Shown one piece after another: positions 1-64,000 of a stretch of DNA of 64,000 nucleotides. Source of the DNA: Anthoceros angustus (Eukaryota; Plantae; Anthocerotophyta); contig MU008158.1 in the NCBI GenBank assembly GCA_010909165.1, positions 1,327,478 to 1,391,477 on the forward strand. Reading direction: 5' to 3'. The position numbers and the translations under genes were made by a program. How positions within the stretch are numbered: position 1 is the first letter of the stretch; every line of letters starts with the position of its first letter. The notes beneath the pieces were generated by a model. The model had not been told where the DNA came from and did not search any database. It saw nothing but the letters and a program-made list of their open reading frames with translations.

Positions 1-2205
1 ACGGGCCGGACTTCTGTTGGTGGGAATGCTCTCAACAAGGCAGCAGAAGCAAATCTGTACTGGTTTCGGGTTTTGATCGGGAATTGTAGATCTGTGTCAG
101 CTGGCCTCATTAATGCTTTACTGGGTGAATCAAATAGTCTTGGTCTTGCTCACCTTCAGCGGTCTCTTCCGCTATCAGCTGTGCTGCCATCAGCTTATAG
201 TCTCTTCTCCATTGCTTTGCAGAAGCAAGGGCGATACTTCCATGCACACAATCGGGATGAAAGTATATTGCAAGCAGCTCTATTAGCTGCCAATGATGTG
301 GTTGCTCATCAACCGTTCAGGGCTGTCTGTTTCTCTGACACTGAAGCATTGTATAACCTCCTTTCAGTTGACACAGAAGAATCACAGCATGCAGCCTCGC
401 TTGATAATCAAGGACTGGATGTGTCTTCTAAACTGATGTCACTGGTTCCTCTTCGAGCACGTGTGTTCTTGTATGCCATCTTGGAGAAGAAGGTGCCAGA
501 TTGTTGGGTTTCCACTGGTGAGAAGACATGCAATCCAGGTGCTGTTGATCACAAATGCCTGCGTCAGATGGATGTATACAAGAACACTGAGGAGCTAGTG
601 AAAGTTCTTGATAATCTTCACCCAGCAACATTTCATTGGCAGTGGGTGGAGCTCCGTTTGCTTCTGAATGAACAGGTGATACTTGAGAAGCTTGAAAGCG
701 CTAATGTCACCGCCGTGCAGGCTCTGGAAGCTGCATTTGCACCACAAGAATCTCGGCAACTCACAGAGTGTGAAAAGACATTCACTGAGATCGTCCTTAC
801 AAGACTGCTAGTACGACCTGATGCTGCAGCCATGTACTCTGAGGTTCTCCATTTCCTTGGGCAAGCATTCGAGGAGTACTTGGTGTTGCAAGTTAAATGG
901 GTTCTAGAAGGCAGTGACATGCTATTTGGTCGGAAAAGTCTCAGGCAGGTGCTTGATAACTATGCTCATCGTCAAGGTTTCACATCTGGTCATCAAGGTA
1001 TGAATGTGTCAAGGTGTCTACCCTTTGGAAGGAAGGGTTCTAGTTGTGAGAATCTATCTGCTATTGCCAAGTCCGCTGACAGTTCTGGTTTCAAAAGACG
1101 GGATTTCAAGATGGAATCCCAAAGTTTGAACCGGCAATATGTCATTGAGAAGGCATTGGTGGAGATGGTGTTGCCATGCCTAGTGCGGAGCAGTGTAGAT
1201 GCTTGCTGTGGATTTGGTATCGAGCTGGCAAAACAACTGACCAATCTGGAGCAGCATCTGAGCATGCTTTCTCGCATGAATGGGCGCCATGTGGCAACAT
1301 TTAGTGCTTCTGACAACTTTAACCATAAAGGCTTGGTTCAACAGAGAGGGTCTATGGCTTGGTTAGACAATGGCAGCCCAGGTGTAGGGCGGAAATCATT
1401 GCCACCCAGCTCAGAATCTCAGCCTCTGTATGCTGCGGCAATACAGGCGTCGGTTTGGTTGCGGCTTCAATTCCTCATGCCTTTGCTGCCCATCATCTAC
1501 TCTGACAGGGAGCAGATGGCTCGCAACATACAGGTGATACTGACACCAGTTGTGCTGCGGCTCCTTGACTCTAGAGTATTGCAGGAGCCCCCAGACCAGA
1601 CCTTCATTACTCAGCGTGATGGGTCTGTCAGTGGAACGGACGGGGAATGGATAGCAGAAGCTGCAACTTGTGGCGTAGCAGCCACTGCCGGGGAATGGGT
1701 GTTTGATAGACTCTTAGCTGTTCTGCACTTCATCTCAAACGGAATGCCATCAGCTCTCCTAGATCAAGAGGTAGCGGAAAGGATGCAGGTCGAGTTGGAC
1801 CAGGTGACTTCCGCAGTCACACCTCACCTGTTGACAGTTATGTCTACCGCGCCGCCTTTCAGTTGCAGGATCAATGCAGGACCCCCTGAATTGTCTCAGA
1901 CAACTCTGGCTTCCTTGCAATCTGGATATCTTGCTGGACAAGCTACCCAAATGGGTACTCAGACCAGGGATGCACCTGGTGGTGATAGTGATGCAGCTAG
2001 TGTCAAAGGAGCTCTTTTAGAGCAAGAAGTGGACCCGTGGTCACTGCTGGAAGATGCAGCTGTGGGGGCAAGTGTCACTGGGCCAAGCTTAGGATCCAGC
2101 AGTGATGCTATGCTGACATTAAAGTCCGCACCTTGGCTCAGGGGTGCCATAAGAGAGAGGCGAAGGGATTCCATCTATGCAGGGTCTGTGGACAGCGACC
2201 CCTGA
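1..2205 (+). CDS. MED12: Mediator subunit 12, C-terminal part (5' end outside window)
   Basis: Frame is open from base 1 to TGA at 2203-2205. Contains plant MED12 C-terminal motifs: WFRVLIGNCR, HWQWVELRLLLNEQ, LTRLLVRPDAA, FGRKSLRQ, LRLQFLMPLLP, EVDPWSLLED, WLRGAIRERRRD. Confidence 0.9.
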   Translation, partial: TGRTSVGGNALNKAAEANLYWFRVLIGNCRSVSAGLINALLGESNSLGLAHLQRSLPLSAVLPSAYSLFSIALQKQGRYFHAHNRDESILQAALLAANDVVAHQPFRAVCFSDTEALYNLLSVDTEESQHAASLDNQGLDVSSKLMSLVPLRARVFLYAILEKKVPDCWVSTGEKTCNPGAVDHKCLRQMDVYKNTEELVKVLDNLHPATFHWQWVELRLLLNEQVILEKLESANVTAVQALEAAFAPQESRQLTECEKTFTEIVLTRLLVRPDAAAMYSEVLHFLGQAFEEYLVLQVKWVLEGSDMLFGRKSLRQVLDNYAHRQGFTSGHQGMNVSRCLPFGRKGSSCENLSAIAKSADSSGFKRRDFKMESQSLNRQYVIEKALVEMVLPCLVRSSVDACCGFGIELAKQLTNLEQHLSMLSRMNGRHVATFSASDNFNHKGLVQQRGSMAWLDNGSPGVGRKSLPPSSESQPLYAAAIQASVWLRLQFLMPLLPIIYSDREQMARNIQVILTPVVLRLLDSRVLQEPPDQTFITQRDGSVSGTDGEWIAEAATCGVAATAGEWVFDRLLAVLHFISNGMPSALLDQEVAERMQVELDQVTSAVTPHLLTVMSTAPPFSCRINAGPPELSQTTLASLQSGYLAGQATQMGTQTRDAPGGDSDAASVKGALLEQEVDPWSLLEDAAVGASVTGPSLGSSSDAMLTLKSAPWLRGAIRERRRDSIYAGSVDSDP

Positions 2206-46344: not shown

Positions 46345-49300
46345 TCATTGTCGCTCTCCAAGAGGCTTCTTGACCGCCTTCGACTGCTTGAGGACTCGAA
46401 CCGCATTCGGGAATCGGGAGCCATCGCCAAAATCGGGGTCTGCTGCCACCCGTGCAGCAAGGTCATGGGATAGCACAGCCATGTATGCCTGCCAGACGCA
46501 GGATGCACCCATCCATCACCATACCCATACAAAATATGCCACTTGCAATGCTTCACGCACCCCAATATGCGTCCATCCCAGTTGGAAACACGGACATGCT
46601 CAATGCCGAATCAGAGCATCAGCTGCTATACATGAGATTAGCTCCGACCACTCACCTCTGCAAGCCCTTCTGTGCTCACCACATGCTGGACAAGCTCTGA
46701 CGCATGGAGCTCATTAGCTGAGCCCGTATTCTCCGATGAAAGAGCAGCCGCATTTTCAGCCATGCTCCTCAAAATGTCTTCGGGAGGTTCTCCTTTCTCC
46801 AATTTCTGTGCTGTTCCTTCCAAACCGGTCTGCAAAGCCATGAATAATGAGCAACAGTCTCAACTTGAAAATGCAGAGCCATGTATCAGATGTTGACAAC
46901 TGTGTACCACAAAACGAGTGAGTACACTTGTATTTGCACAAATGCGATCTTCAACAACTCCCACAACGGATAACAAATTTGCAAACAACACAAAATAGCT
47001 CTGATATGATAAAAAAGTCTTTGATCCACCTTTTGTCGTTTAGCAACAGGCGACCCACGAGCATAAACATCACTGAAAGGTCTCTGTGAAGGCATTGACT
47101 GCTGATGGTTGAAATCAGCCGCTAGAGTTTCGGTCCAGGAAGGCACTTCCTCCTGCAACAGCACAACAAGCAAAAACTTTAGAATTCCACTAATATTTGC
47201 TACATGATAGATGAGACATTTTCACAGTTGTCGACACATTTCCAGGATTGAAGAGCCAGCAAAACAGCACCAATCCCCACTCAGCAAGAGACAGGGGCAA
47301 CAGGAACTGGCCTGCGTCAGGGCATCCTTCCATCTCTTTGATCCATCTGGATCTTGGCACAAGTGAGACTCCCCACTCTGAATGCCTGCCTCTGAAATTG
47401 CTCCAGCTCCAGAAGCCTGGTGGGCTGTCCCATCTGTAGTTCTTCCACTGCCCAGCATTTGCGAGACAACTGGTATGACTTGATGTAGCATTGCACCCAA
47501 GTCAAGACCACCTTGACTTTCACGGTCCAGCCGGCTTGGTAAACCCTCTTCCATACCCACCTCATCACCCATGCCTGCCATAACCTGACGGACGATATTT
47601 CCCATAAGAGGACTCCCCATGAGTTGACTCATGATGCCACCAAGCCCTGCAGCAGCATTTCCATCAGCTGATCTAAACAGATCACTTATTGCTGGGTTAG
47701 ACATCAACGGTGCCATAATCTCGCTTCCTCCACTCTGCGTAACACCACGACCACCAAGAAGTGGAAGCAGACCTGCAAACTGCTGCCCCATGGAGTGCTC
47801 AGAAGCATTTTCTTCTGGCCTGCTCTCAGATCTGTCAAGCTGTGACATAAAATTCTGCAGCACATTTGGACCTCCTTGTCCCATCGAACCAGCCTGCGAT
47901 ACAGCTCTGCCTGCATTCCCATCTCCAGCTGGTAGACGCCGAGAGCGTCTTCGAGGCTGCAAGGACACTCTGAGTTAAGATCTATCTTCAAGTAAAGCTG
48001 CATTGAGTCCGACCAGGTTGTCCATAACAAACTCACCCTTGAAGGAAGAGGTTGAAGAACACCAAGTCCCAACCCAACAGGAGGTGCATGATCACCCTCT
48101 TCAGCAGTAGAACCTTTCCCACTATCCTCAATCTGCACCTCTTGTGTACCCTGTGCCACTGGTACAGCCTCTGATGGGCCAGGTTGGTTCTCACTTGTCA
48201 ATGACGAAACACCACCACTGAGATCACTTTTTTGATCCACATCAATATCCATCCCTTCACCTGTCCCAGTGGTTGCGGGTGGCTCTGACAACGGTGCCCC
48301 ATGGGAACTGGCCAGATGGGGGTTGTGCTGTTGGGACTCGTAGTGGCCTGCTTGTCCTCCATCATGGGCATCTACAATTGCGGAATTGTGCTGGTTATCT
48401 CTACCCTCTTGCTGATTGACCTGCACAAAATTAACATCACATCACTACCAGCACAAAGACTGCACTGAATCTCTCAGGCCTTTAGCTTTGATTACTAAAA
48501 CTTCACCTCATGTGCTGGTTCAACAGTTCTGTTTAAACATTTACAGGCAAGAGAAAGGAGAAAAACAGCCCACTTTTCGTGGGGCAATCGATGTTGTGAA
48601 AGCAACTACTAAACGAAGAAACGAATGAACCTGACCATGAAAGACATACTACTTCCATCAGTTCCCTCATTCACAGGAACAGTGAAAACCTGGTCAGTCT
48701 GCTGACGAGAGGCAGATTGGTTATTTTGGTAAGCTTCCATTATCTGCTGCAAGAGTGGACCCACTGATCCCATAAACGAGGTAACCCCAATGCCAGGTGT
48801 TCCAGCACCAGGATTTCTGTCACCACCATCAGCATCAGATGTTGCTCTGCCTGATGAAACGCCAACAGGTACACTGTTAGCAGTTGAAGCAGCTTGCCCA
48901 ACACCAGTACCTGTGCCTAGAAACACAAGCAAAGAATTAAAAGACCTGCACAGGACATACTAGGTACATGGCACTGCAATCACGCAGACCTTTACACAAC
49001 ATACCTATCCTAATGTCTGCTGAGCCAGATGCACCCTGCTGAGAACCCTGCAAATTTTGTCCTCTTGAAGCTGGGGCTTGCTGGATTCGGAACTCTCCAT
49101 TTCCAGAGGGACCAAGAGAAAATGAAATTCCATCAGGGTGAGACAGACCCTGACCGCTCAAGCCCTGAACATGGATTTGGGCTCGGTACGTCGGCTGAGA
49201 GATTGAAGTAAGATGCTCTGGCTGAACGGTTGCAGTAGAATCCAGTGGTGGTGCCACCCCCGACACATTTGCTGTGTTGGCCCCCAAAGGTGAAGGTCTC

Positions 49301-52300
49301 ACTGGGAGCTGTGAATTAGGATCACGTAACCTCGTAGCAATTGGATGGTGCATCAAGATGGTGCTTTCTGGGGCAACACGAGCAGGTGGATGCGTTGATC
49401 CTGAGGCAGAGGCCGGCTGAGCAGTAGTTGTGTTGTTCTGTCTTCCCCTCACTGGCAACACACGTACTGACCTGGAGTCATCAAAAGTCATGAAGGCTCC
49501 TTGATAGTGACCTACACCTCCTCCGGTTGAAGCCTGTGCAGCCTGATCTGTTCTCTGCTCTGCCACAGCCCTGTCAATCAGCTGCCGCATACTGAGGGTC
49601 TCCTCTGTTCCAGGGGCCCGAAAACCAACAGGTTCCGCATTTCCACTTTGACCTCCACTCGCAGAATCCACACGCTCAAAAATTTGCCTCATGTGTCTCA
49701 TGGTAAGACTTGGAGCACCAGATGTATTTCCAGCTGAAGTGCGTGAAGCTGGCTGCTGCTGGGAAGAAGGGGAAGGGGAAGAAGAGGGAGATGCAGGGGG
49801 CAGCCCAAAGTCACTTGTATGTATATGAATGTCAATACTTCTGGGACCTAAACTGCCTCCCGGTGAAGGAACAAAGACACCGCCATTTGGCTGAGCTGTG
49901 CCAATTGGCACAGCACCCAATGACCCACCCGTGTGGAACGCTAGAGGAGGCTGCAGCAAGCATTTCGACTACGTAAGCGCTTTCTATGTAGGCCCAGTTT
50001 GTCATAAATGAACCGGTCGGTTATTGGCATGAATTCCATAGCATGCAGGACCACATGCATTTGAAAATATGAATACTGCATTTCACATGACAAGAGAGGG
50101 CTTCGAGACAACTACTTTTGGGCACGTCTTAGATTTCATGGGTAACTTATTACCTGAATCATCATTGGATTTGGCCCGGTCGGTGAAATGAAAACAGCAG
50201 GTCCAGCATTCACAACTGACTCAGCCTGTGGAAATCCAGAAGGAATCACAGTCAAAGCATGGCCACCAACACATATGATGCAAAAATGGTACATTCAAGG
50301 CACTGACTTACAGGAGATTGACCCATGCGTAAATTCTGGGTGGTCCGACCAAGCTCCAAAAGCAAAGCTCCGAGTTGTTGAATCATATTGCCATCGCGAA
50401 GAGCAGCAGCTTGTACTTCAGCTCTTGCACCAACATCAGTAATGGAAGGCTCATTTTCCAATTGCCCTGCAAGCCTCTACAATGAGAGTATCTATATAAG
50501 TAGACAGGCGATTAAAAGTTCATGAAGTAAAACCCTATCATTGCTGATTGGAGACAAATAACAACTTCTACTAATTGAGTAACCCACCGAAAGGGCAGTG
50601 CCAGCACCACCACTCAATAGACCTTGCACACGCCGTACAAGACCACCCAGAGCAGCTGGAGTTGGCAGGCGTCTACTCAAAGTTTGAGGGCCTGGTGTGC
50701 TTGAATGCTCTTGAACATCACCATTAAGAGGCACAGTACTTGACGTACTCGGCTGAGCAGAGTGCACAGCCAAGCTAGGAGGACCAGGGGCCGGATATGA
50801 CCCGGAAGTTGGGGTGTTTTCCACAGGGTGCTGTAACTGTGGGGGATTTCCTCCAGAAGTCATGGCCTCTGTATGAAAGACAGTGAGATATTGAAATACA
50901 AAAATCAAAAGCTAATCTTCAAGCCTTCGAACTTGTGCAAATGGCAGAGAAGGTAATGTATAGACTTACCGTTTGAAGCAAATCCTTGCTCCAGGCGATC
51001 CAAGTACTGAGACATGGTTGTCAAAGCGTCAGGTATAACCTGAAAACGCAATTTCAGGGTAATGGAACAAAGTTCAAGGTGAATGGCCTTAAGAGCACAA
51101 TGACAATCAGAATAGCGGCATTCAGCAAAACTTCAGCAGGGTATTGGAGTCTGAAGGATGAGGATTATTTATTAAGGTATGCAATCAAGGGGCAGTCAGG
51201 GGGATCATCAGGCTACTGAGGGACATGGGTAGCATGTTAGAACACACCATGGGCTGAGCAAATGTGCTCCTCGAAGGACCAGATGCTCCAGACAGGCTCC
51301 CTATAGCTGAAGGGCTAAATAAAGCATCGATTTGCAATTCCAAATCAGTGTGCAGAGGATGCTCCAGTAAATCAGTCGCAGCACCTGCTGCTGATAAGCC
51401 ATCTATTCTTGCTTGTCCATGTGATGCAGCAGGCTGCTGTGCACGTGCAGGAAGTAAACCCTGATGCAATTTTGTACATTTGTAGATGCAGGTGCTAGCA
51501 GGGTAGTTGGGTACAAGAGCAGACAAGGCGACACAATGAAACTCATTAATCAAAGTATCACAAGTAAATACTTACCGCCGTGACACCAGCAGTATTAACT
51601 CCTAGGCCTCCAGGAACTCCATGGCCAAGCCCTACAGTGCTGAGCACAGCCGAAATTATCTGTTCACAAAAATGGACGGACTAGTTATGGCCTAGCTTAG
51701 GCTCATTACTGTGCTAGGGAACCAACTGAACTAAATATCATTTCAACAGGTGGAGGTCCTAAATTTCACTCTTACCATACCGGAGCCCCAACTACACTTC
51801 ACAAACTTTCTGTCCCCACCCTCAGCACACGATTTGCTTCTGATACAGCTAGCATCTTACCCTGTTGAGATCAGGCATTGCACCTTCTCCACCGTCTGGG
51901 ATGTTAATTGTCCCCATTAGGACGCTGTGAGAGACATGACCCCCTCTGTTCTGCTGTGAAACCGTAGGTCCATCTGACATTCCTCCCCCATCTGCAGCAT
52001 GACAACCCCGAAAAACATTAAGCTTCACTATACCAATAAGTTGAATGAAGTCTGCATGCTGCTCCAAATCACTGAAAATGGCATGCATCCCACCTTCCGT
52101 GCCACCGCTTGCTCCAGCAGTTGCCGTGGGCTGCTGTGGAGGTCTAGCGACCAAGTGCAGCGTATGTCCATCTTCCACATCTGACTGTTGGTTAAGAAAA
52201 TTCAACCACACCACCTTGCACTCTCCCAAACGCCCCATACTTTCTCACCCACAATCCCCTTTGCACACAACCACCTGAAAGCTTGAGAATGGATACTGTA

Positions 52301-56294: not shown

Positions 56295-58482
56295 TCAAGA
56301 TGCAGATCTTCGGGTAACCCTCAGCGGCAAGCCTGATTTGAGTTTGGGCATGGGCCAATGACTGACGGTCTGATCCAGCGCTCCGCTGGGCTTGAAGCTG
56401 TGTCAGCACAAGAGTAGAAGCTTAGAACAACTGTTAAGGTACTCGCCGTTGTTTGGCGAAGTATGAACGAAGCCGGAAATCTCCTGGTGCACTCACTTGT
56501 AGTTTGTCACAAAGTGATGGAGGAAGACCAGCATCTCCTGCTTGGCCAGCTCGCTTCCTGGGCACGCCCTAGGCCCATTTCCGAAGGGTGTGAAGGTGTG
56601 GGTTTTGGGTACGTTCTGCCAAAACCACGTCCACGGTATGTGAACAACAAAGCTGTTTCGCAGCCCATCAATCTAGGCTGGATTGCTCACCTGAAATCTG
56701 GAAGGATCGAACTTGTGGGGATCCGGGAAGCGTTCAGGATCCAGGTGGACATATTTGTTCCAGGTGAGCACTTTCCAGCCCTTGGGAAATAGAATTCCTG
56801 CACGTTTCAAGACCCGTTGATGCAGCACTGCTGTTGGTGCATTGCATTGGAATGCACTTCAGGAGTGTACCTACCGTTAAAAACGACATCCTCCGTTGCT
56901 TCTCTCATGTTGAAAGACACAATGTTCCTTGTCCTGAAAGTCTCTTGAATAACCTGTGACCACGTATTGGTAGTCAGGAACAGCCTGAGCTGCTGTGGAT
57001 GTAGTATCTATCGTTGAGGAGGATGACGCGCACATGCCGTATACCCACCCTGTTTGTGTAGGTCAGTTTTCGAAGGTCATCCGGGGAGATGGGATCGTCA
57101 ATGTGTGCTCTTTGTCGAGCAATGGCATCATTCTCCTCCTGATTCCACGAGTTAGTGCATACAGTCTGGATCCGCTCCCTCGTGCTGCTCTGTGCTGTAG
57201 CAATACCAGGGGTTTGAGGGTTTGGATGTGAGACGAGGCATGTATGCATACCTGAACCCGTTGGAGAAATTCAGGGTAGAGCAGCAGGTTGTGGATGACC
57301 CAGGTGAGCGAAATGGCTGAAGTGTCATGGGCCGCAAACAAGATGCTTAGAATGTTATCCGTCACTTGCTCGTCGGTGAACTTGCCTCCAGCTCCCTCCG
57401 CCTGTAAGAAGGAGTCAAGCACGTCCTGATGGATCACTTTGCCGGCCTCTTGCCGCCTCTTTTGGATCTCTATGGCGAGACACTGCACTAGCTCCTTGCG
57501 TGCCTGGGGTCAAGGTGGCAGAGGAACAGCGTGTCAGAGCTCTATCAACGTTGAAAGCGGATTACAGAGATGGCATCGGACAGGTTGTTGCACACTGTCA
57601 CACCTGAATGGCTCGGCCGAAGGTTGTCCCAGGAAGATTGATCGGAGTGGCGAAGAAGCCTTGCTCAATTGCTGTGAAAAGCTTCCTCAGCCTGTCGATG
57701 TCTGTATGGTGTTTCAGGCTGTCGACGGCGAAGAGCAAGGCGACATGGAAAGTGAACTGCAGAAAGGAAGCCACGGTTTATATGTTGTCAAAAGCGGGAG
57801 ATGCTTGGAGGAGTGATCTGGATGTCAAATTCCTACTCCTGAAAATGGCTCACCTTTTGCAGCTCCTCTGCAACACGAATGGTTGCTTCCTGCCCCCAGC
57901 TCTGCATCTGCTCTCTTGCAACTCGATCAATATCAGTAGTGAAGGTTCTCAGGGAATCCGAAATGATTGGAGCTTGTATGAGTCTCCGATAGTGATCGTG
58001 CAACTCTCCGTTTGTCGAATTGATTGACGTTTTGCCCATGATCTGCTGAGTGGCGTCTGTGTAGCTTGAGTGGAAAAGCTTGGACTGAAGCACAAATCTT
58101 GTTGCTTCAAGTGTGGTGGTGCAAATTGTTGGACACCCAAACAAATGAGTCCTGAAAACTCCTCCATATCTGCAGCGCATCAAGGATCAAGATGTTCTTG
58201 CAGAGTGAGCACCTGGGAGGGTAGCACTGGTTACTACTCAGACTGGAGGCATGAAAATCCTCCTCACTGTTTTAGGCGAGGGAGCATGAAGTCATCTGAT
58301 GAGCCGCTGAGAAATTGGATGCTGTCCCCGACAACCGGCAGCTGCCAGAATCGTCCTGGAGGCACTTGGGCGCTTCTGCTCCTGACGTTCAGGGTGCGGG
58401 AATGGTTGCAGATCCATGCAATCAACAAGAAGGGAAGGCCCAGGGCTAACCCCACCCACAACTCAACTCCTGCTGCTGCCAT
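56295..58482 (-). CDS. Cytochrome P450, CYP85 clan (CYP707-like), 9 exons
   Basis: Exons 58482-58268, 58169-57854, 57756-57604, 57503-57252, 57138-57049, 56953-56875, 56797-56691, plus two more. I-helix FAAHDTS, ETFR, FDPSRF, heme motif [10 protein letters not shown]. The 90/79/107-nt exon series is typical of CYP85-clan genes. Confidence 0.93.
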
Positions 58483-59013: not shown

Positions 59014-62000
59014 TCAGTACGCAGCAATGACCTCGCCTTTCATGGATAGTGCCAGAGCTCCGAGTTCTGCACCATCATGCATTTTCAGGCCTGGAAGCAC
59101 AAGGGCTCTAGGTCCAACATAGCAGCTTTCTCCGATCTCATTCACCTTGAACTCTACCTTGTCTCCTTCGTACACATGGCCGAAGAGGAGAGAGTTTCTG
59201 CCCACCGCACTGCCAGCTCCCACTGTGAGCAGGTCAGGATTGAGAGCCAGAAGCGTGTCCACATAGGGAACCCTGCCTGCAGAGTCTCCGATGGTTGCAC
59301 CAAGTAGTCGGAGGTAGAAGCAGCCTAGGAGGGAGCCCTTGCCGAGTTCCAGGAAGTTCTGACACAGGAGCACGTTGATGGCTTGCCAGGTTGTGTCTCG
59401 CCAAGATGTGAAGCTCCACAGAGCACAGGAGCTGCCATCCCTTGCTTTGCCCACAAAAGTCCAACGGCAAGCTACAGTCAACCCTGTCAAGAGGAGGCCT
59501 GAGAAGAGGTATGCTGCAGGTACCAGAGTTAGCATCCATGTTGTTCCTATTTTGGTTCCGATGAATGAGAGTGCGAGAAGGGATGGAGAGTAGGCCAGAG
59601 CAAGCAGCGCCAAGGGAGTGAAAAGCTGCAAAACTGGTTGGATCAACCGACTCAGCACTTCCCCATCAGTGTGCTTGCGTCCTAATAAGCTTCGCGTTCC
59701 CTCCAAAGCCTCAGGTGCCACGGTCTTCTCATCAAGATGCTGTTCAATACAGCAGGTTCCTCGTACTGGCATCTGCTGGTATCTGCTAGGAACCGGAGTC
59801 CCCAGTTTCCCACCTGGAAATGCTGTACAGCCTCCGAATCTGCGTTCCTCCAACTTTCCCTCTGGCAGGTGCAGCAAGCTATCGGATGTTTGGAGCAGCT
59901 TTCTCCAAGCTGGAAGCAGAGGCTTCCCTGTTCGCAGATGCTGAGCGATGTCATATGCCAGTGACCGACCGTGGTCTATGGAGGCACTTTCCGACGCTGT
60001 CTTGGCTGTCACCAGGTCAATGCTTTGTGGTCCATTGCTGGGGTTGAATCGAAGACCTTCTGTGACCTTCTCATCGAGAACCTCATCCAGGTGTACCAAG
60101 CCCACATCTCTGTAAGGATAAACAGCCTCATCCCATGGCTTGGTGCAATCCAGAGCATCTTCATTTTGCGATGTGTCTTGAGAGACAGGACGGAGCTGCA
60201 GCTGGAAGATGTACTTCACTCCACGTGCAGAGAGCACCCTGCTCCGAAATTCAGCAGCCAAGAACTGGGGCGGTCGAGTGTCATTTGGATCTCTGGGAAC
60301 TGTTCCAGTGTCGGGTGGGATGATGTCAAACGGCTCTACTTTGCCTTCATTTTCGCCGAAGCTCTCATCCGATGGCCGCATCCTGAACTTGACATAGTAC
60401 TCCTGTGGTGCGCCTCCCGACGATCGGAAAAGCCTAGCCACATTGGAGTAGTAATGCAGCTCAGCATACGAGTTGGGCAGTCGGAGAGTCTCCCACGATG
60501 CAACGCCCGATCGTGGGTTTCTCTGGACGAAGAGAACTCTTTCATCATGGCTTTTCATGAAATAGCTGACGAAGTCCGACATGTTGCTGCAATGGAAAGC
60601 TCTCCCGGTCTTGAGGGTCAGATCCAGCAGGCTCTGCTCTGCCTCTGATTCTGCCTCAGGCCGGAGAATTCTCACTGATGCGCCTCTGGCATCCCCTCTG
60701 GCATCATCATCACCGCTGAGGCCGTTGCTGTGGCGGACTATAATTGCATAGGTCTTGCCAGGAGCGAAGACATCATGAGCTGGAAGCGTGTCTCTCAGAC
60801 TCTCCGAGATGCTCAAAGTCCCCTTCCCTGCCACTCCCAGCCGGTGGAAGTACCTGGCGTTCAAGGACAGGGTCGTCTTGGCAATGCTGGCTGCTAGGTT
60901 TGCCACAAGCTTTCGGTACAAGGGATCCATTTCTTCAATTCGGTAGTATTCTCGTTCCTGTTGTTTTTCCGACTCTGCTGAGATCTTCGCAACTGCTCCT
61001 TGCTGGTAGATCATCACTGGACTCTTCACACCAACGTACACACCTCCTTTTTGAAGGAAAGATCCTGTCACCGCCACAGAGTTGGCTCCCAGTATGGCTT
61101 CGTCCTCCAGCTTCACTCCTGGCATAAGGACACTCTGTGCCCCCACAATACATCTTGACCTTACATCAACCTTACCAAACTGGAGAAAATGCTTGTACTG
61201 GACCTGCTTCAGCAACGTCCGGGTCACAGTGCTAGTGATGATCTTTGCAAAGTCTCCCAGGTGAGATTCATCCCCAAGCGTAAGAAGATCAGGGTCCAGT
61301 AAAGGATTGACACTGCGAATGGAAGCCATGTTACCTATTGTGGCCCCCAGGCTGCGAAGGTAAGTCACCAAGGCGTCTGTCCCAGAAATGAACATGGCGA
61401 CTTTTATGTGCGTTGCCGTGAGCATGCGGTGAATCAGCCAGACATTGAATCCGAGGCGAGAGTTAAGTGGCAAGGCATCATCCTTCTTAACCCTCTCGAT
61501 CAGAGAATCTCCAATGAGCTGCCACTTGAGAGCGCAGGTGATTACAGACAGGGTGAAGGCAAAGGTCAAGTAAGCAGCGCCAGAGAAAACAAGCAGGACG
61601 AGGGCATCCCTGATGTTGGCAAACCTACAGAGGAACCTGAAGATGAGCTCAGGTTGGTGGAAGGCCAGGAGAGGTGCCAGTCCCGTCAATGCCCATGGCA
61701 GAGTTGCTGCAACAGGAAAGCAGACGAAACCAATCCCGGCGATGGTGGCATATTGCTCCGCCGGGCCCCTCTGTAGGATGGAAAGCTTGGAATTGAGCCA
61801 TAGCAGGAGGATGTAAGAGAGCATGGCCGAGACCGTGGTGACCAGTCCAATTAGGTACAATCCACAGAGCTGCTGTGCTGCCAATGCACTGGCAGTTGTC
61901 GATCCCCATATCTCCTACAGGTCCAACATCCAATTAATTTGACAAGAAAACAAGTTAGCATTTAGGAAAGAAGGTGGGAGTGGAAGTTGGGGTGGAAACC

Positions 62001-63913
62001 TGTGTCAGATGGTCAGATGCGCCTTGAAGCTTCTTGCCCACCTTCTCACCGATCTCTGTTCTCCCAAGGGCTGGAATCCTTGCTCCAGCATCCAGAATTG
62101 TACCCTGCTGCACAACCGCGTAGGGTTCAACTACAGCGCCGCTTCCAATCCGGATGGGTTGGAACCTCACCACCCCTCCACGCACGTCATGGCTCTGGAT
62201 TGTGGCTCCTTCGCTTAACACAGCCCCACTCCCAACATAAAGCAGGGACGGGTCTGTGATGTCTGTAGTGTCCAGAAACACATGGTCTCCAATCTCTGCT
62301 CCCAGCAAGCGGTACCAGTATGTGAGGAAAACGGTGCCCCTAAGGTGCATTCCCACCACATGGTTGGAAGCAAAGTCACACAAGCGATACAGCATCCACC
62401 AGTTGACATAATCCAAGGACCAGAGCGGCACTGCCGTCTTAATGCAGTAATTGGGCCTCAGCAGCGTGGTTGCAAAGATGCTCACTGCCGTCAATGCAAG
62501 GTAAGCAAGCCAACCCAAAGGCACGAGCAGCGCGAACTTGACAGCCAGCACGAAGGAGGGAATTGGGCCCTGGACGTTGCTGATCACTAGATTGCCAACC
62601 TTCCCGTAGACGAAGAATGCCGGAAAAATGGTGACAGCAGCAATGTAAACCAACCCTAGCACCTGCAGGCAAGTGATCACCACCTTCCGCCGCTGAGAGG
62701 GCTCGACAGCTGACTCCAACTGTGCATCAGAGATGAGCTCCTTCTCCATCTCCGCCTCTAAACTGGTGGCATATTCCTGACAATTTTCACTACCCAATCT
62801 CAGTGTCTCAGCCTCAGTCGTGGTACTAACGGGTGCTGCCTTGTGCAGCATCTGAAGGGCCACGCTGGTGAGGTCGGCGATGGAGCCTGCAGTGTAGACA
62901 TCGATAGCGGCAATGTGGATTCCCAGAAACTCCGAAAGCTTCTGTGCAGCCCACACCACCGCCACGGAATCCATTCCGAAGGACGTCAAAGCGTCCGTTG
63001 TGGAAATCTGGTCGGTTCCCAATCCCATCCTCTCCGCCACCAACTTCACCAGATGGTCTTCAATTTCCTTCCCAGTCTTTCTGCGGGCTGTGTTTGTGTC
63101 TCGCAAGCTACACCTTGTGACACTCCTGTCCACCATGAGCTTACTGGCTGGCCTGACGATGACGAGCGTCCCGTCCAGGAACCTCTTGGAGCACTCTCGC
63201 CGCCGGATCTTCCCCGACGTGGTCTTGGGAATTGTTCTGGGCTTCACCAGAACGACGTGGGCCACTTCCACGCCGTGCTCCGACGCCACATCCGCCTTGA
63301 TCCTTCCCACCAGCTCCGGCTCAAGGCGGTTGGCCTTCTCGTCCCTGACCTCCGCGACCACCACGATGCCGACATCGTCCGGAGCAGACGCTCGGGATGC
63401 AGCTCCTGCCCTGCCAGTTGTCCGCAATCGCAGCTCCGAGAAAGGAACTCCGAAGGCAGCGCTGCAGCCGGGGCGGATGCTGCGGGAACAGCCTTCCACC
63501 GTCTTCTCGACGTCGGAGGGATAGATGTTCCGGCCCGCCACGATGATGAGGTCCTTGATCCGGCCCGTGACAAATAACATGTCTCCAATCACCCTCCCCA
63601 GGTCCCCGGTGCGCAGGAACCTTCGCCCGCTGTCGTCCAGCTGGTTGTGGAAAGTCTCCCTGCTCAGCTCCGGGAGGCCCCAGTACCCAATCCCGGCGCT
63701 GGGGCTGCTCACCCAGATCTCCCCTTCCCTCCCGTTCTCCAATTCCTGCCCCCTTTCGGGATCCACGATCCTGATGTCTACGTCGCCGTTGCCCTGATCC
63801 ACATACCCGCAGCACACTCTGTTCTCCCAGTCCAGGTAAACGGGTCTCTTCATGCCGTACGCAGTGCACGCGAAGACAGAATTCTCTGCCAGCCCGTATC
63901 CTGGAGCCATGAT
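59014..63913 (-). CDS. NRPS-like membrane megasynthase: FAAL-type adenylation - carrier protein - (TM+LbH)x2 - catalase-like heme domain - TM+LbH (5' part outside window)
   Basis: ORFs 61955-63982 and 59014-61884 join in frame through an 85-nt GT-AG intron (61999-61915). Motifs PGYGLAEN, LRTGDLG, GRIKDLIIVAGRNIYP, PKTTSGKIRR; GMDSV; three repeats of (Y/L)RxLGAxIG..(D/N)PxLL; RYFHRLG..VRHSN..DARG..GRSLAY. Probable upstream acceptor at 63914. Confidence 0.88.
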
Positions 63914-64000
63914 CTGTCTCCAATTGCAGGAGAACTTGTAAGCAAGCTTGCCAACAACTTTGTGTGACCAATGTTCAGCCATTGCAATGACAGAGGTGGG

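What the first reader, a model, noticed from the sequence alone, without database searches (positions are those of the whole stretch)
59014..63913. Plant NRPS-like assembly line: FAAL - ACP - Pls-type membrane modules with an embedded catalase-like domain
Seen in sequence: one spliced reading frame of >1,600 aa within the window. It contains a fatty acyl-AMP-ligase-type adenylation domain, a phosphopantetheine site (GMDS, Ser codon 62966-62968), three modules each made of paired hydrophobic helices plus a hexapeptide left-handed beta-helix, and a heme-catalase fold between modules 2 and 3. Established knowledge: A-T-(TM/C-like)x3 is the architecture of bacterial epsilon-poly-L-lysine synthetase (Pls)-type membrane NRPSs; FAALs load fatty acids onto carrier proteins; catalase-related heme domains (coral allene oxide synthase type) transform fatty-acid hydroperoxides. 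Inference: the enzyme activates a fatty acid or oxylipin, modifies it, and condenses or polymerises it at a membrane, giving an unknown lipid polymer or acyl amide/ester. Plants are not known for NRPS-type chemistry. I recall similar uncharacterised proteins in other land plants but no assigned function. The intron shows this is a nuclear gene rather than bacterial contamination; ancient horizontal origin is possible.
Basis: partly seen in the sequence, partly recalled or inferred. Interest (0 to 1): 0.9.

Follow-up and report, generated by a model that had tools for sequence, protein, structure and literature searches.

The report
Land-plant fatty-acid tailoring megaenzyme
This is a real plant gene for a very large membrane enzyme, conserved across land plants and with no characterised function that I could find, that most likely loads a fatty acid onto a built-in carrier, modifies it with flavin and heme domains, and hands it to an unknown acceptor at a membrane.

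Summary
Observation confirmed. Two stop-free exons (667 + 966 aa) are joined by an 85-nt phase-0 intron. They encode FAAL (C-half), ACP, three Pls/PosA-type membrane/beta-helix modules, and a coral-AOS-like heme domain between modules 2 and 3. The family (~2,300 aa; liverwort to angiosperms) was noted as function-unknown in 2021 (PMC8460268). This scan already reported a paralog 249 kb away (s1-643485).

Added here: (1) the family's N-terminal domain, beyond the window, is closest to the P. acnes PUFA isomerase; (2) FAAL + heme + flavin + ACP recur, reshuffled, in myxobacteria, Streptomyces, a chytrid, a malawimonad and a green alga, ending in thioesterase, PlsC acyltransferase or condensation domains, twice beside PUFA-synthase-like genes; (3) the plant heme domain groups with that set, keeps His/Arg/Tyr, but has Phe and Lys for cAOS Thr66 and Asn137; (4) modules 1 and 3 both keep the acyltransferase His, whereas bacterial Pls has it only in module 3.

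Best reading: an ACP-tethered fatty-acid tailoring line whose Pls-type end is a membrane acyltransferase that releases the product. Polymer synthesis is a weaker rival. Substrate and product are not shown, and no RNA evidence was obtained.

The parts
63152..64000 (-). C-terminal half of the FAAL adenylation domain; frame open to the window edge; A10 Lys codon 63209-63211
   Evidence: short FAAL-specific insertion
62867..63052 (-). Acyl carrier domain (single copy); phosphopantetheine Ser codon 62966-62968
   Evidence: PF00550 E 7e-7; Ser 112/112
62021..62713 (-). Pls-type module 1: two hydrophobic helices plus left-handed beta-helix; His codon 62189-62191 aligns with galactoside acetyltransferase His115
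   Evidence: (His 112/112)
61915..61999 (-). 85-nt phase-0 GT-AG intron, position shared with another plant locus
   Evidence: not confirmed by reads
60979..61914 (-). Pls-type module 2: three hydrophobic segments plus beta-helix, no His at the acyltransferase position
59875..60972 (-). Catalase-fold heme domain, coral-AOS-like: distal His 60844-60846, Arg 59965-59967, proximal Tyr 59953-59955; Phe for Thr66 at 60847-60849, Lys for Asn137 at 60610-60612
59017..59697 (-). Pls-type module 3: hydrophobic helices plus beta-helix; His codon 59176-59178
   Evidence: (His 111/112)
59014..59016 (-). Stop codon TGA

Best explanation
One spliced nuclear gene (probably of a hornwort; inferred) encodes a member of a conserved ~2,300-aa land-plant family: flavin domain - FAAL - ACP - membrane module 1 - module 2 - heme domain - module 3. 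Proposed working, all chemistry inferred. (1) The FAAL adenylates a long-chain, probably polyunsaturated fatty acid and loads it on the ACP without CoA (about 0.9). (2) The N-terminal flavin domain, of the PUFA-isomerase type and lying outside the window, shifts or oxidises double bonds of the tethered chain, plausibly to a conjugated diene (about 0.55). (3) The catalase-fold heme domain oxygenates or rearranges the tethered chain using O2 or H2O2 rather than a ready-made lipoxygenase hydroperoxide (about 0.55). (4) The three beta-helices form an intramolecular pseudo-trimer on the membrane and act as a His-dependent acyltransferase that moves the modified acyl group from the ACP to a hydroxyl or amine acceptor, the release step (about 0.7). 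The product would be a defined oxylipid ester or amide. Shown: gene structure, domains, conserved catalytic residues, domain co-occurrence. Inferred: every reaction, the substrate, the order of steps and the product.
For: Contiguous full-length homologs from Marchantia, Selaginella, Cryptomeria and about 100 angiosperms. Tomato N-terminal domain: 2b9w E 3e-27 over its full length, other hits only at the FAD motif; bacterial counterpart E 1e-30. The FAAL/heme/flavin/ACP set recurs in different order with interchangeable ends: thioesterase (Archangium, Streptomyces, Spizellomyces), PlsC acyltransferase (Polyangiales and Myxococcaceae loci), condensation domain, esterase or P450. Streptomyces locus L004 reads Pfa-like synthase - PPTase - FAAL - heme/flavin/ACP/TE; L005 has a FabA + acyltransferase gene about 6 kb upstream. 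Heme-domain tree: plant clade 100, inside a 39-row set with these enzymes at 95, apart from most LOX-fused domains. Heme ligands invariant in 206 plant sequences. Module-1 His aligns with His115 of galactoside acetyltransferase (its catalytic role is from my own knowledge). The PosA model is a pseudo-trimer of beta-helices packed as in acyltransferases (PMC10522769). An O2-using catalase-fold biosynthetic enzyme has precedent (EasC, PMC12003167).
Against: No biochemical data and no reads. This gene's own flavin domain was not seen. The residues that bind substrate in the P. acnes isomerase (Arg88, Phe168, Phe193; own knowledge) are not clearly kept in the homologs. The FAAL-specific insertion is 10-28 residues shorter than in the bacterial relatives. 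PUFA-synthase neighbours were seen in only 2 of about 13 microbial loci. Marchantia has His in place of the proximal Tyr. Pls itself is a polymerase. The tree was a quick search, midpoint-rooted, with SH-aLRT support only.
Confidence: 0.5

Rival explanations
1. Pls-like polymerase: the flavin and heme domains put a hydroxyl (or similar nucleophile) on the fatty acid, and the membrane domain chains such monomers into an oligoester or estolide for a wall, cuticle or spore coat.
For: Complete three-module Pls/PosA layout directly behind A-T; Pls and PosA are proven membrane polymerases; some plant copies have two ACPs.
Against: Relatives with the same front cassette end in plain release domains. 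TIGR02353 scores of 71 and 134 (tomato full length 151) are far below the 423 cutoff. Plants have His in modules 1 and 3, while three bacterial Pls proteins have it only in module 3.
Confidence: 0.2
2. Classic catalase-related AOS/HPL: a separate lipoxygenase supplies a hydroperoxide, the heme domain converts it to an allene oxide, ketol or aldehyde, and the rest conjugates that oxylipin.
For: Closest solved structure is coral AOS (Z 32.4, rmsd 2.8 over 313 residues, sunflower model); His67, Arg349 and Tyr353 equivalents are invariant; Asn137 is reported as non-essential in coral AOS (PMC5617202).
Against: Thr66 is Phe in 206/206 and Asn137 is Lys in 204/206. LOX-fused relatives mostly keep Thr/Ser and Asn, whereas the FAAL-linked set mostly does not. 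No LOX was found in the window or in any of 14 loci. Tree placement is with the FAAL-linked set.
Confidence: 0.15
3. The flavin domain is an oxidase that does the only tailoring; the heme domain just removes the H2O2 it makes.
For: Amine-oxidase fold (PF01593) adjacent to the heme domain in the microbial enzymes; some catalase-related AOS enzymes have catalase activity.
Against: The domain is AOS-like, not a true catalase (Z 32 vs 22). The distal Asn is lost. An invariant remodelled pocket suggests a specific substrate.
Confidence: 0.1
4. Two separate genes, or a decaying non-functional copy.
Against: In-frame canonical intron at a conserved position, no stops, all catalytic residues kept, single-chain homologs.
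Confidence: 0.04

Closest known systems
Plant FAAL-like multidomain protein 'between HemY and catalase domains' (Patil et al. 2021, PMC8460268); database entries such as tomato K4ASN0 and Marchantia MpACOS18
   Same: Same family: 36-51% identity and colinear over both exons.
   Different: Nothing essential. The paper gives no function. The passages I read name no Pls-type end, isomerase-type flavin domain or shuffled microbial cassette.
Pls / PosA homopoly(amino acid) synthetases (TIGR02353)
   Same: A-T followed by three membrane-helix + beta-helix modules; module fold TM 0.81.
   Different: FAAL instead of an amino-acid A domain; heme domain inserted after module 2; extra flavin domain; His in modules 1 and 3 rather than only 3; far below the family cutoff.
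Coral catalase-related allene oxide synthase (1u5u, 3dy5)
   Same: Fold, distal His, proximal Tyr and Arg.
   Different: Thr66 to Phe, Asn137 to Lys; fused to FAAL/ACP rather than to a lipoxygenase.
Propionibacterium acnes PUFA isomerase (2b9w; identity of the entry from own knowledge)
   Same: Only full-length PDB match of the family's N-terminal domain.
   Different: Tested on homologs only; substrate-binding residues not clearly kept; here part of a carrier-based line.
Microbial FAAL-heme-flavin-ACP-(TE/PlsC/C) proteins (Archangium WP_407755965, Streptomyces WP_172387093, Spizellomyces SPPG_08952)
   Same: Same four domain types; nearest heme domains outside plants.
   Different: Different order and release domain; Thr or others rather than Lys at the Asn137 site; no characterisation found for them either.
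Chanoclavine synthase EasC (PMC12003167)
   Same: Catalase fold used for O2-dependent biosynthetic oxidation; analogy only.
   Different: Full-size catalase, free alkaloid substrate, 16% identity.

Membership tests
Plant FAAL megaprotein family (HemY/flavin-FAAL-ACP-catalase) | Colinear FAAL-ACP-beta-helix-catalase chain with high similarity to ~2,300-aa plant proteins | tested here: met
Plant FAAL megaprotein family (HemY/flavin-FAAL-ACP-catalase) | N-terminal flavin domain in this gene | not testable with these tools
   Beyond the window edge; unchecked note s1-655774 says present; homologs have it
FAAL | Sequence groups with FAALs above FACLs and A domains | tested here: met
FAAL | Full-length FAAL-specific insertion | tested here: inconclusive
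   37 residues between flanking motifs vs 47-65 in relatives; about 17 shorter than 7r7e in the tomato homolog
FAAL | FAAL-specific helix and blocked CoA pocket | not tested
   N-terminal half is outside the window; not examined in homologs
FAAL | Transfers acyl to holo-ACP, not to CoA | not testable with these tools
   needs an assay
Pls/PosA synthetase | Three membrane + beta-helix modules after A-T | tested here: met
Pls/PosA synthetase | TIGR02353 cutoff 423 bits | tested here: not met
   70.8 and 134.4 per exon; 150.9 for full-length tomato
Pls/PosA synthetase | Amino-acid-activating A domain | tested here: not met
   FAAL models score far above TIGR01733
Pls/PosA synthetase | Polymer product | not testable with these tools
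   needs reconstitution
Catalase-related AOS/HPL | Catalase core with distal His, proximal Tyr and Arg | tested here: met
   206/206 each
Catalase-related AOS/HPL | Distal Thr66 and Asn137 | tested here: not met
   Phe 206/206, Lys 204/206
Catalase-related AOS/HPL | Fused or neighbouring lipoxygenase | tested here: not met
   none in the window or 14 loci
Hexapeptide (left-handed beta-helix) acyltransferase | Beta-helix fold with the catalytic His at the loop exit | tested here: met
   Z 11-15 to acyltransferases; module-1 His aligns with 1kqa His115 at E 0.002, a weak match; modules 1 and 3 aligned

The most novel reading that the evidence does not exclude
Land plants share a self-contained, bacterially derived, carrier-tethered lipid assembly line, made by grafting a microbial FAAL/flavin/heme/ACP cassette onto a Pls-type membrane domain. 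It makes a conserved and still unidentified oxylipid conjugate or polymer, with a Lys-distal catalase-fold heme performing chemistry not yet described. One testable guess is conversion of a conjugated 10,12-diene into a furan or other cyclic oxylipid.
Probability: 0.35. Interest if true: 0.9.

Novelty: new variant of a known kind. Interest (0 to 1): 0.68.

Why it matters
A 250-kDa NRPS-like enzyme is kept from liverworts to crops with intact catalytic residues, and I found no paper giving it a function. That points to an unidentified plant lipid product and to carrier-tethered tailoring chemistry that plants are not credited with. The microbial relatives with thioesterase ends, and the Streptomyces copy beside a PUFA synthase, give an easier route to the chemistry than the plant membrane protein. 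The gene itself is one more member of a family flagged in 2021, so the value lies in the mechanism lead rather than in the discovery of the family.

Tried and rejected
It did not name the places as human-like. A bacterial-genome scan with the plant heme alignment found nothing; a wider bacterial alignment was too diverse and a narrower one gave 8 loci, mostly myxobacterial. Paper searches for MpACOS18, for plant NRPS-like + catalase, and for plant homologs of the P. acnes isomerase found no characterisation; the library lacks most subscription journals. Rejected: bacterial contamination (intron, plant neighbours, plant-clade placement); true catalase; Pls membership; gamma-carbonic-anhydrase reading of the beta-helices (weak hits only). 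Presence in Arabidopsis or mosses was not tested, because hit lists were truncated. Direction of gene transfer was not tested: no rooted clade test.
Full report
Observation. On the minus strand, 62000-64000 and 59017-61914 translate without stops to 667 and 966 residues. They are separated by an 85-nt GT-AG intron (61999-61915) with a branch-like CTAAC, in phase 0. Against 105 full-length homologs the two products are colinear and abut, with a median gap of -2 residues, and base 64000 falls near residue 800, so about a third of the protein lies beyond the window. A plant genomic contig has a phase-0 intron in the same linker. The host is probably a hornwort; this is inferred from compact introns, a PPR-DYW neighbour and unchecked scan notes.

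Domains. Exon 1 holds the C-half of a FAAL, an ACP with Ser at 62966-62968 and module 1. Exon 2 holds module 2, a catalase-fold domain and module 3. The module-1 model (pLDDT 88.6, pTM 0.80) shows two long helices followed by a beta-helix. Its best Atlas match is a Pls/PosA cluster (TM 0.81), and its PDB matches are hexapeptide acyltransferases. Modules 1 and 3 are homologous repeats (98.8%). Module 2 has three hydrophobic stretches and a low-confidence beta-helix in the sunflower model. The heme domain matches coral allene oxide synthase far better than catalases (E 7e-27 for the window sequence; Z 32.4 vs about 22 for the sunflower model).

Family. About 2,300-residue homologs occur across angiosperms, in Cryptomeria, Selaginella and Marchantia; Selaginella and Cryptomeria have two ACPs. 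Patil et al. 2021 noted plant proteins with a FAAL between HemY and catalase domains, function unknown (PMC8460268). I found no later characterisation in the held library. The 'HemY' domain of the tomato homolog matches the P. acnes polyunsaturated fatty acid isomerase structure over its full length (2b9w, E 3e-27), while every other hit covers only the FAD motif. The isomerase's substrate-binding residues, as I recall them, are not clearly kept, so 'isomerase-type fold' is shown and 'isomerase' is not. The scan had already described a two-ACP paralog 249 kb away (s1-643485) and the 5' part of this gene (s1-655774).

Wider relatives. An exhaustive search with the heme domain gave, directly below the plant proteins, a tier of large proteins built from the same parts in another order: FAAL - heme - flavin - ACP, ending in a thioesterase, a PlsC-type acyltransferase, an esterase, a condensation domain or a P450. 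Named sources are Archangium and other myxobacteria, Streptomyces, the chytrid Spizellomyces, the malawimonad Gefionella and the green alga Myrmecia. Their flavin domain also matches 2b9w best. In Streptomyces the cassette follows a Pfa-like synthase gene, a PPTase and a FAAL; a second locus has a FabA + acyltransferase gene nearby. No lipoxygenase was detected in any locus. In a quick maximum-likelihood tree the plant heme domains form one group (100) within a 39-row set dominated by these enzymes (95), apart from most LOX-fused and stand-alone domains. The tree is midpoint-rooted and fragments were left out, so it shows affinity, not a donor.

Active sites. The heme domain keeps the distal His, the Arg and the proximal Tyr in 206 of 206 plant sequences, but has Phe for cAOS Thr66 (206/206) and Lys for Asn137 (204/206) (numbering read; roles from PMC5617202). 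FAAL-linked microbial domains likewise mostly have Phe (24/42) and a non-Asn residue (33/42), whereas LOX-fused ones mostly keep Thr/Ser (15/16) and Asn (12/16). Marchantia has His at the proximal site. In the beta-helices, the His of module 1 (112/112) aligns with His115 of galactoside acetyltransferase, a weak but in-register match. Module 3 has the equivalent His (111/112) and module 2 does not. Three bacterial Pls/PosA proteins carry that His only in module 3. The PosA model places the three beta-helices as one pseudo-trimer like sugar acyltransferases (PMC10522769). The FAAL-specific insertion is shortened throughout the plant family; that paper reports the insertion as the lesser CoA-rejection element.

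Mechanism. The constant core across kingdoms is loader + carrier + flavin + heme, and the variable part is the last domain, whose known types all release or transfer acyl groups. I therefore read the Pls-type end as the plant version of the release step: a membrane acyltransferase passing a tailored fatty acyl group from the ACP to an acceptor (0.5 for the whole scheme). A PUFA substrate rests on the isomerase-type and AOS-type folds and on two PUFA-synthase neighbourhoods. Use of O2 or H2O2 by the heme rests on the missing lipoxygenase and the remodelled pocket, with EasC as precedent. Rivals are a Pls-like lipid polymerase (0.2), classic AOS/HPL chemistry on an external hydroperoxide (0.15), simple peroxide removal (0.1), and separate or dead genes (0.04). 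None of the chemistry is shown.

Verdict. The gene is real and belongs to a plant family that has been noted but, as far as the held papers show, not characterised. It works like a FAAL-started, Pls-ended NRPS-like enzyme, but it fails the membership tests for Pls/PosA and for AOS. Novelty: new variant of a known kind. Interest 0.68.

Noticed in passing
window 56500-58482 (-): A multi-exon cytochrome P450 starts about 530 bp after the stop codon on the same strand (PF00067); it looks like CYP85 clan by my own knowledge. Linkage to the megaenzyme in other plants was not tested.
   Followed up: partly
   Followed up: partly
window 73-2205 (+) and 48937-49959 (-): ORFs of 710 and 340 aa with no Pfam match at E 0.001.
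   Followed up: no
P0215:1750-2303; L001 15215-16786; L002 15230-16816: Many microbial FAAL-heme-flavin-ACP-TE proteins end in a ~530-aa domain with no Pfam hit, whose Atlas features resemble squalene-hopene-cyclase-type toroids (score 0.93).
   Followed up: partly
L004 1-13558 (Streptomyces sp. MNP-20): Operon-like run of Pfa-like synthase, PPTase, FAAL and heme-flavin-ACP-TE protein: a compact candidate cluster for an unknown PUFA-derived product.
   Followed up: partly
P0212 / P0361 (Marchantia MpACOS18): The proximal heme Tyr is His and the distal motif is altered, unlike the other plant copies examined.
   Followed up: partly
P0213, P0280: Proteins with two tandem AOS-like catalase domains, one followed by flavin and ACP domains.
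   Followed up: no
L003 (Logan SRR33208241): Closest relative found (62% in the heme domain, sister in the tree), at 69% GC with no intron at the shared site; organism not determined.
   Followed up: partly
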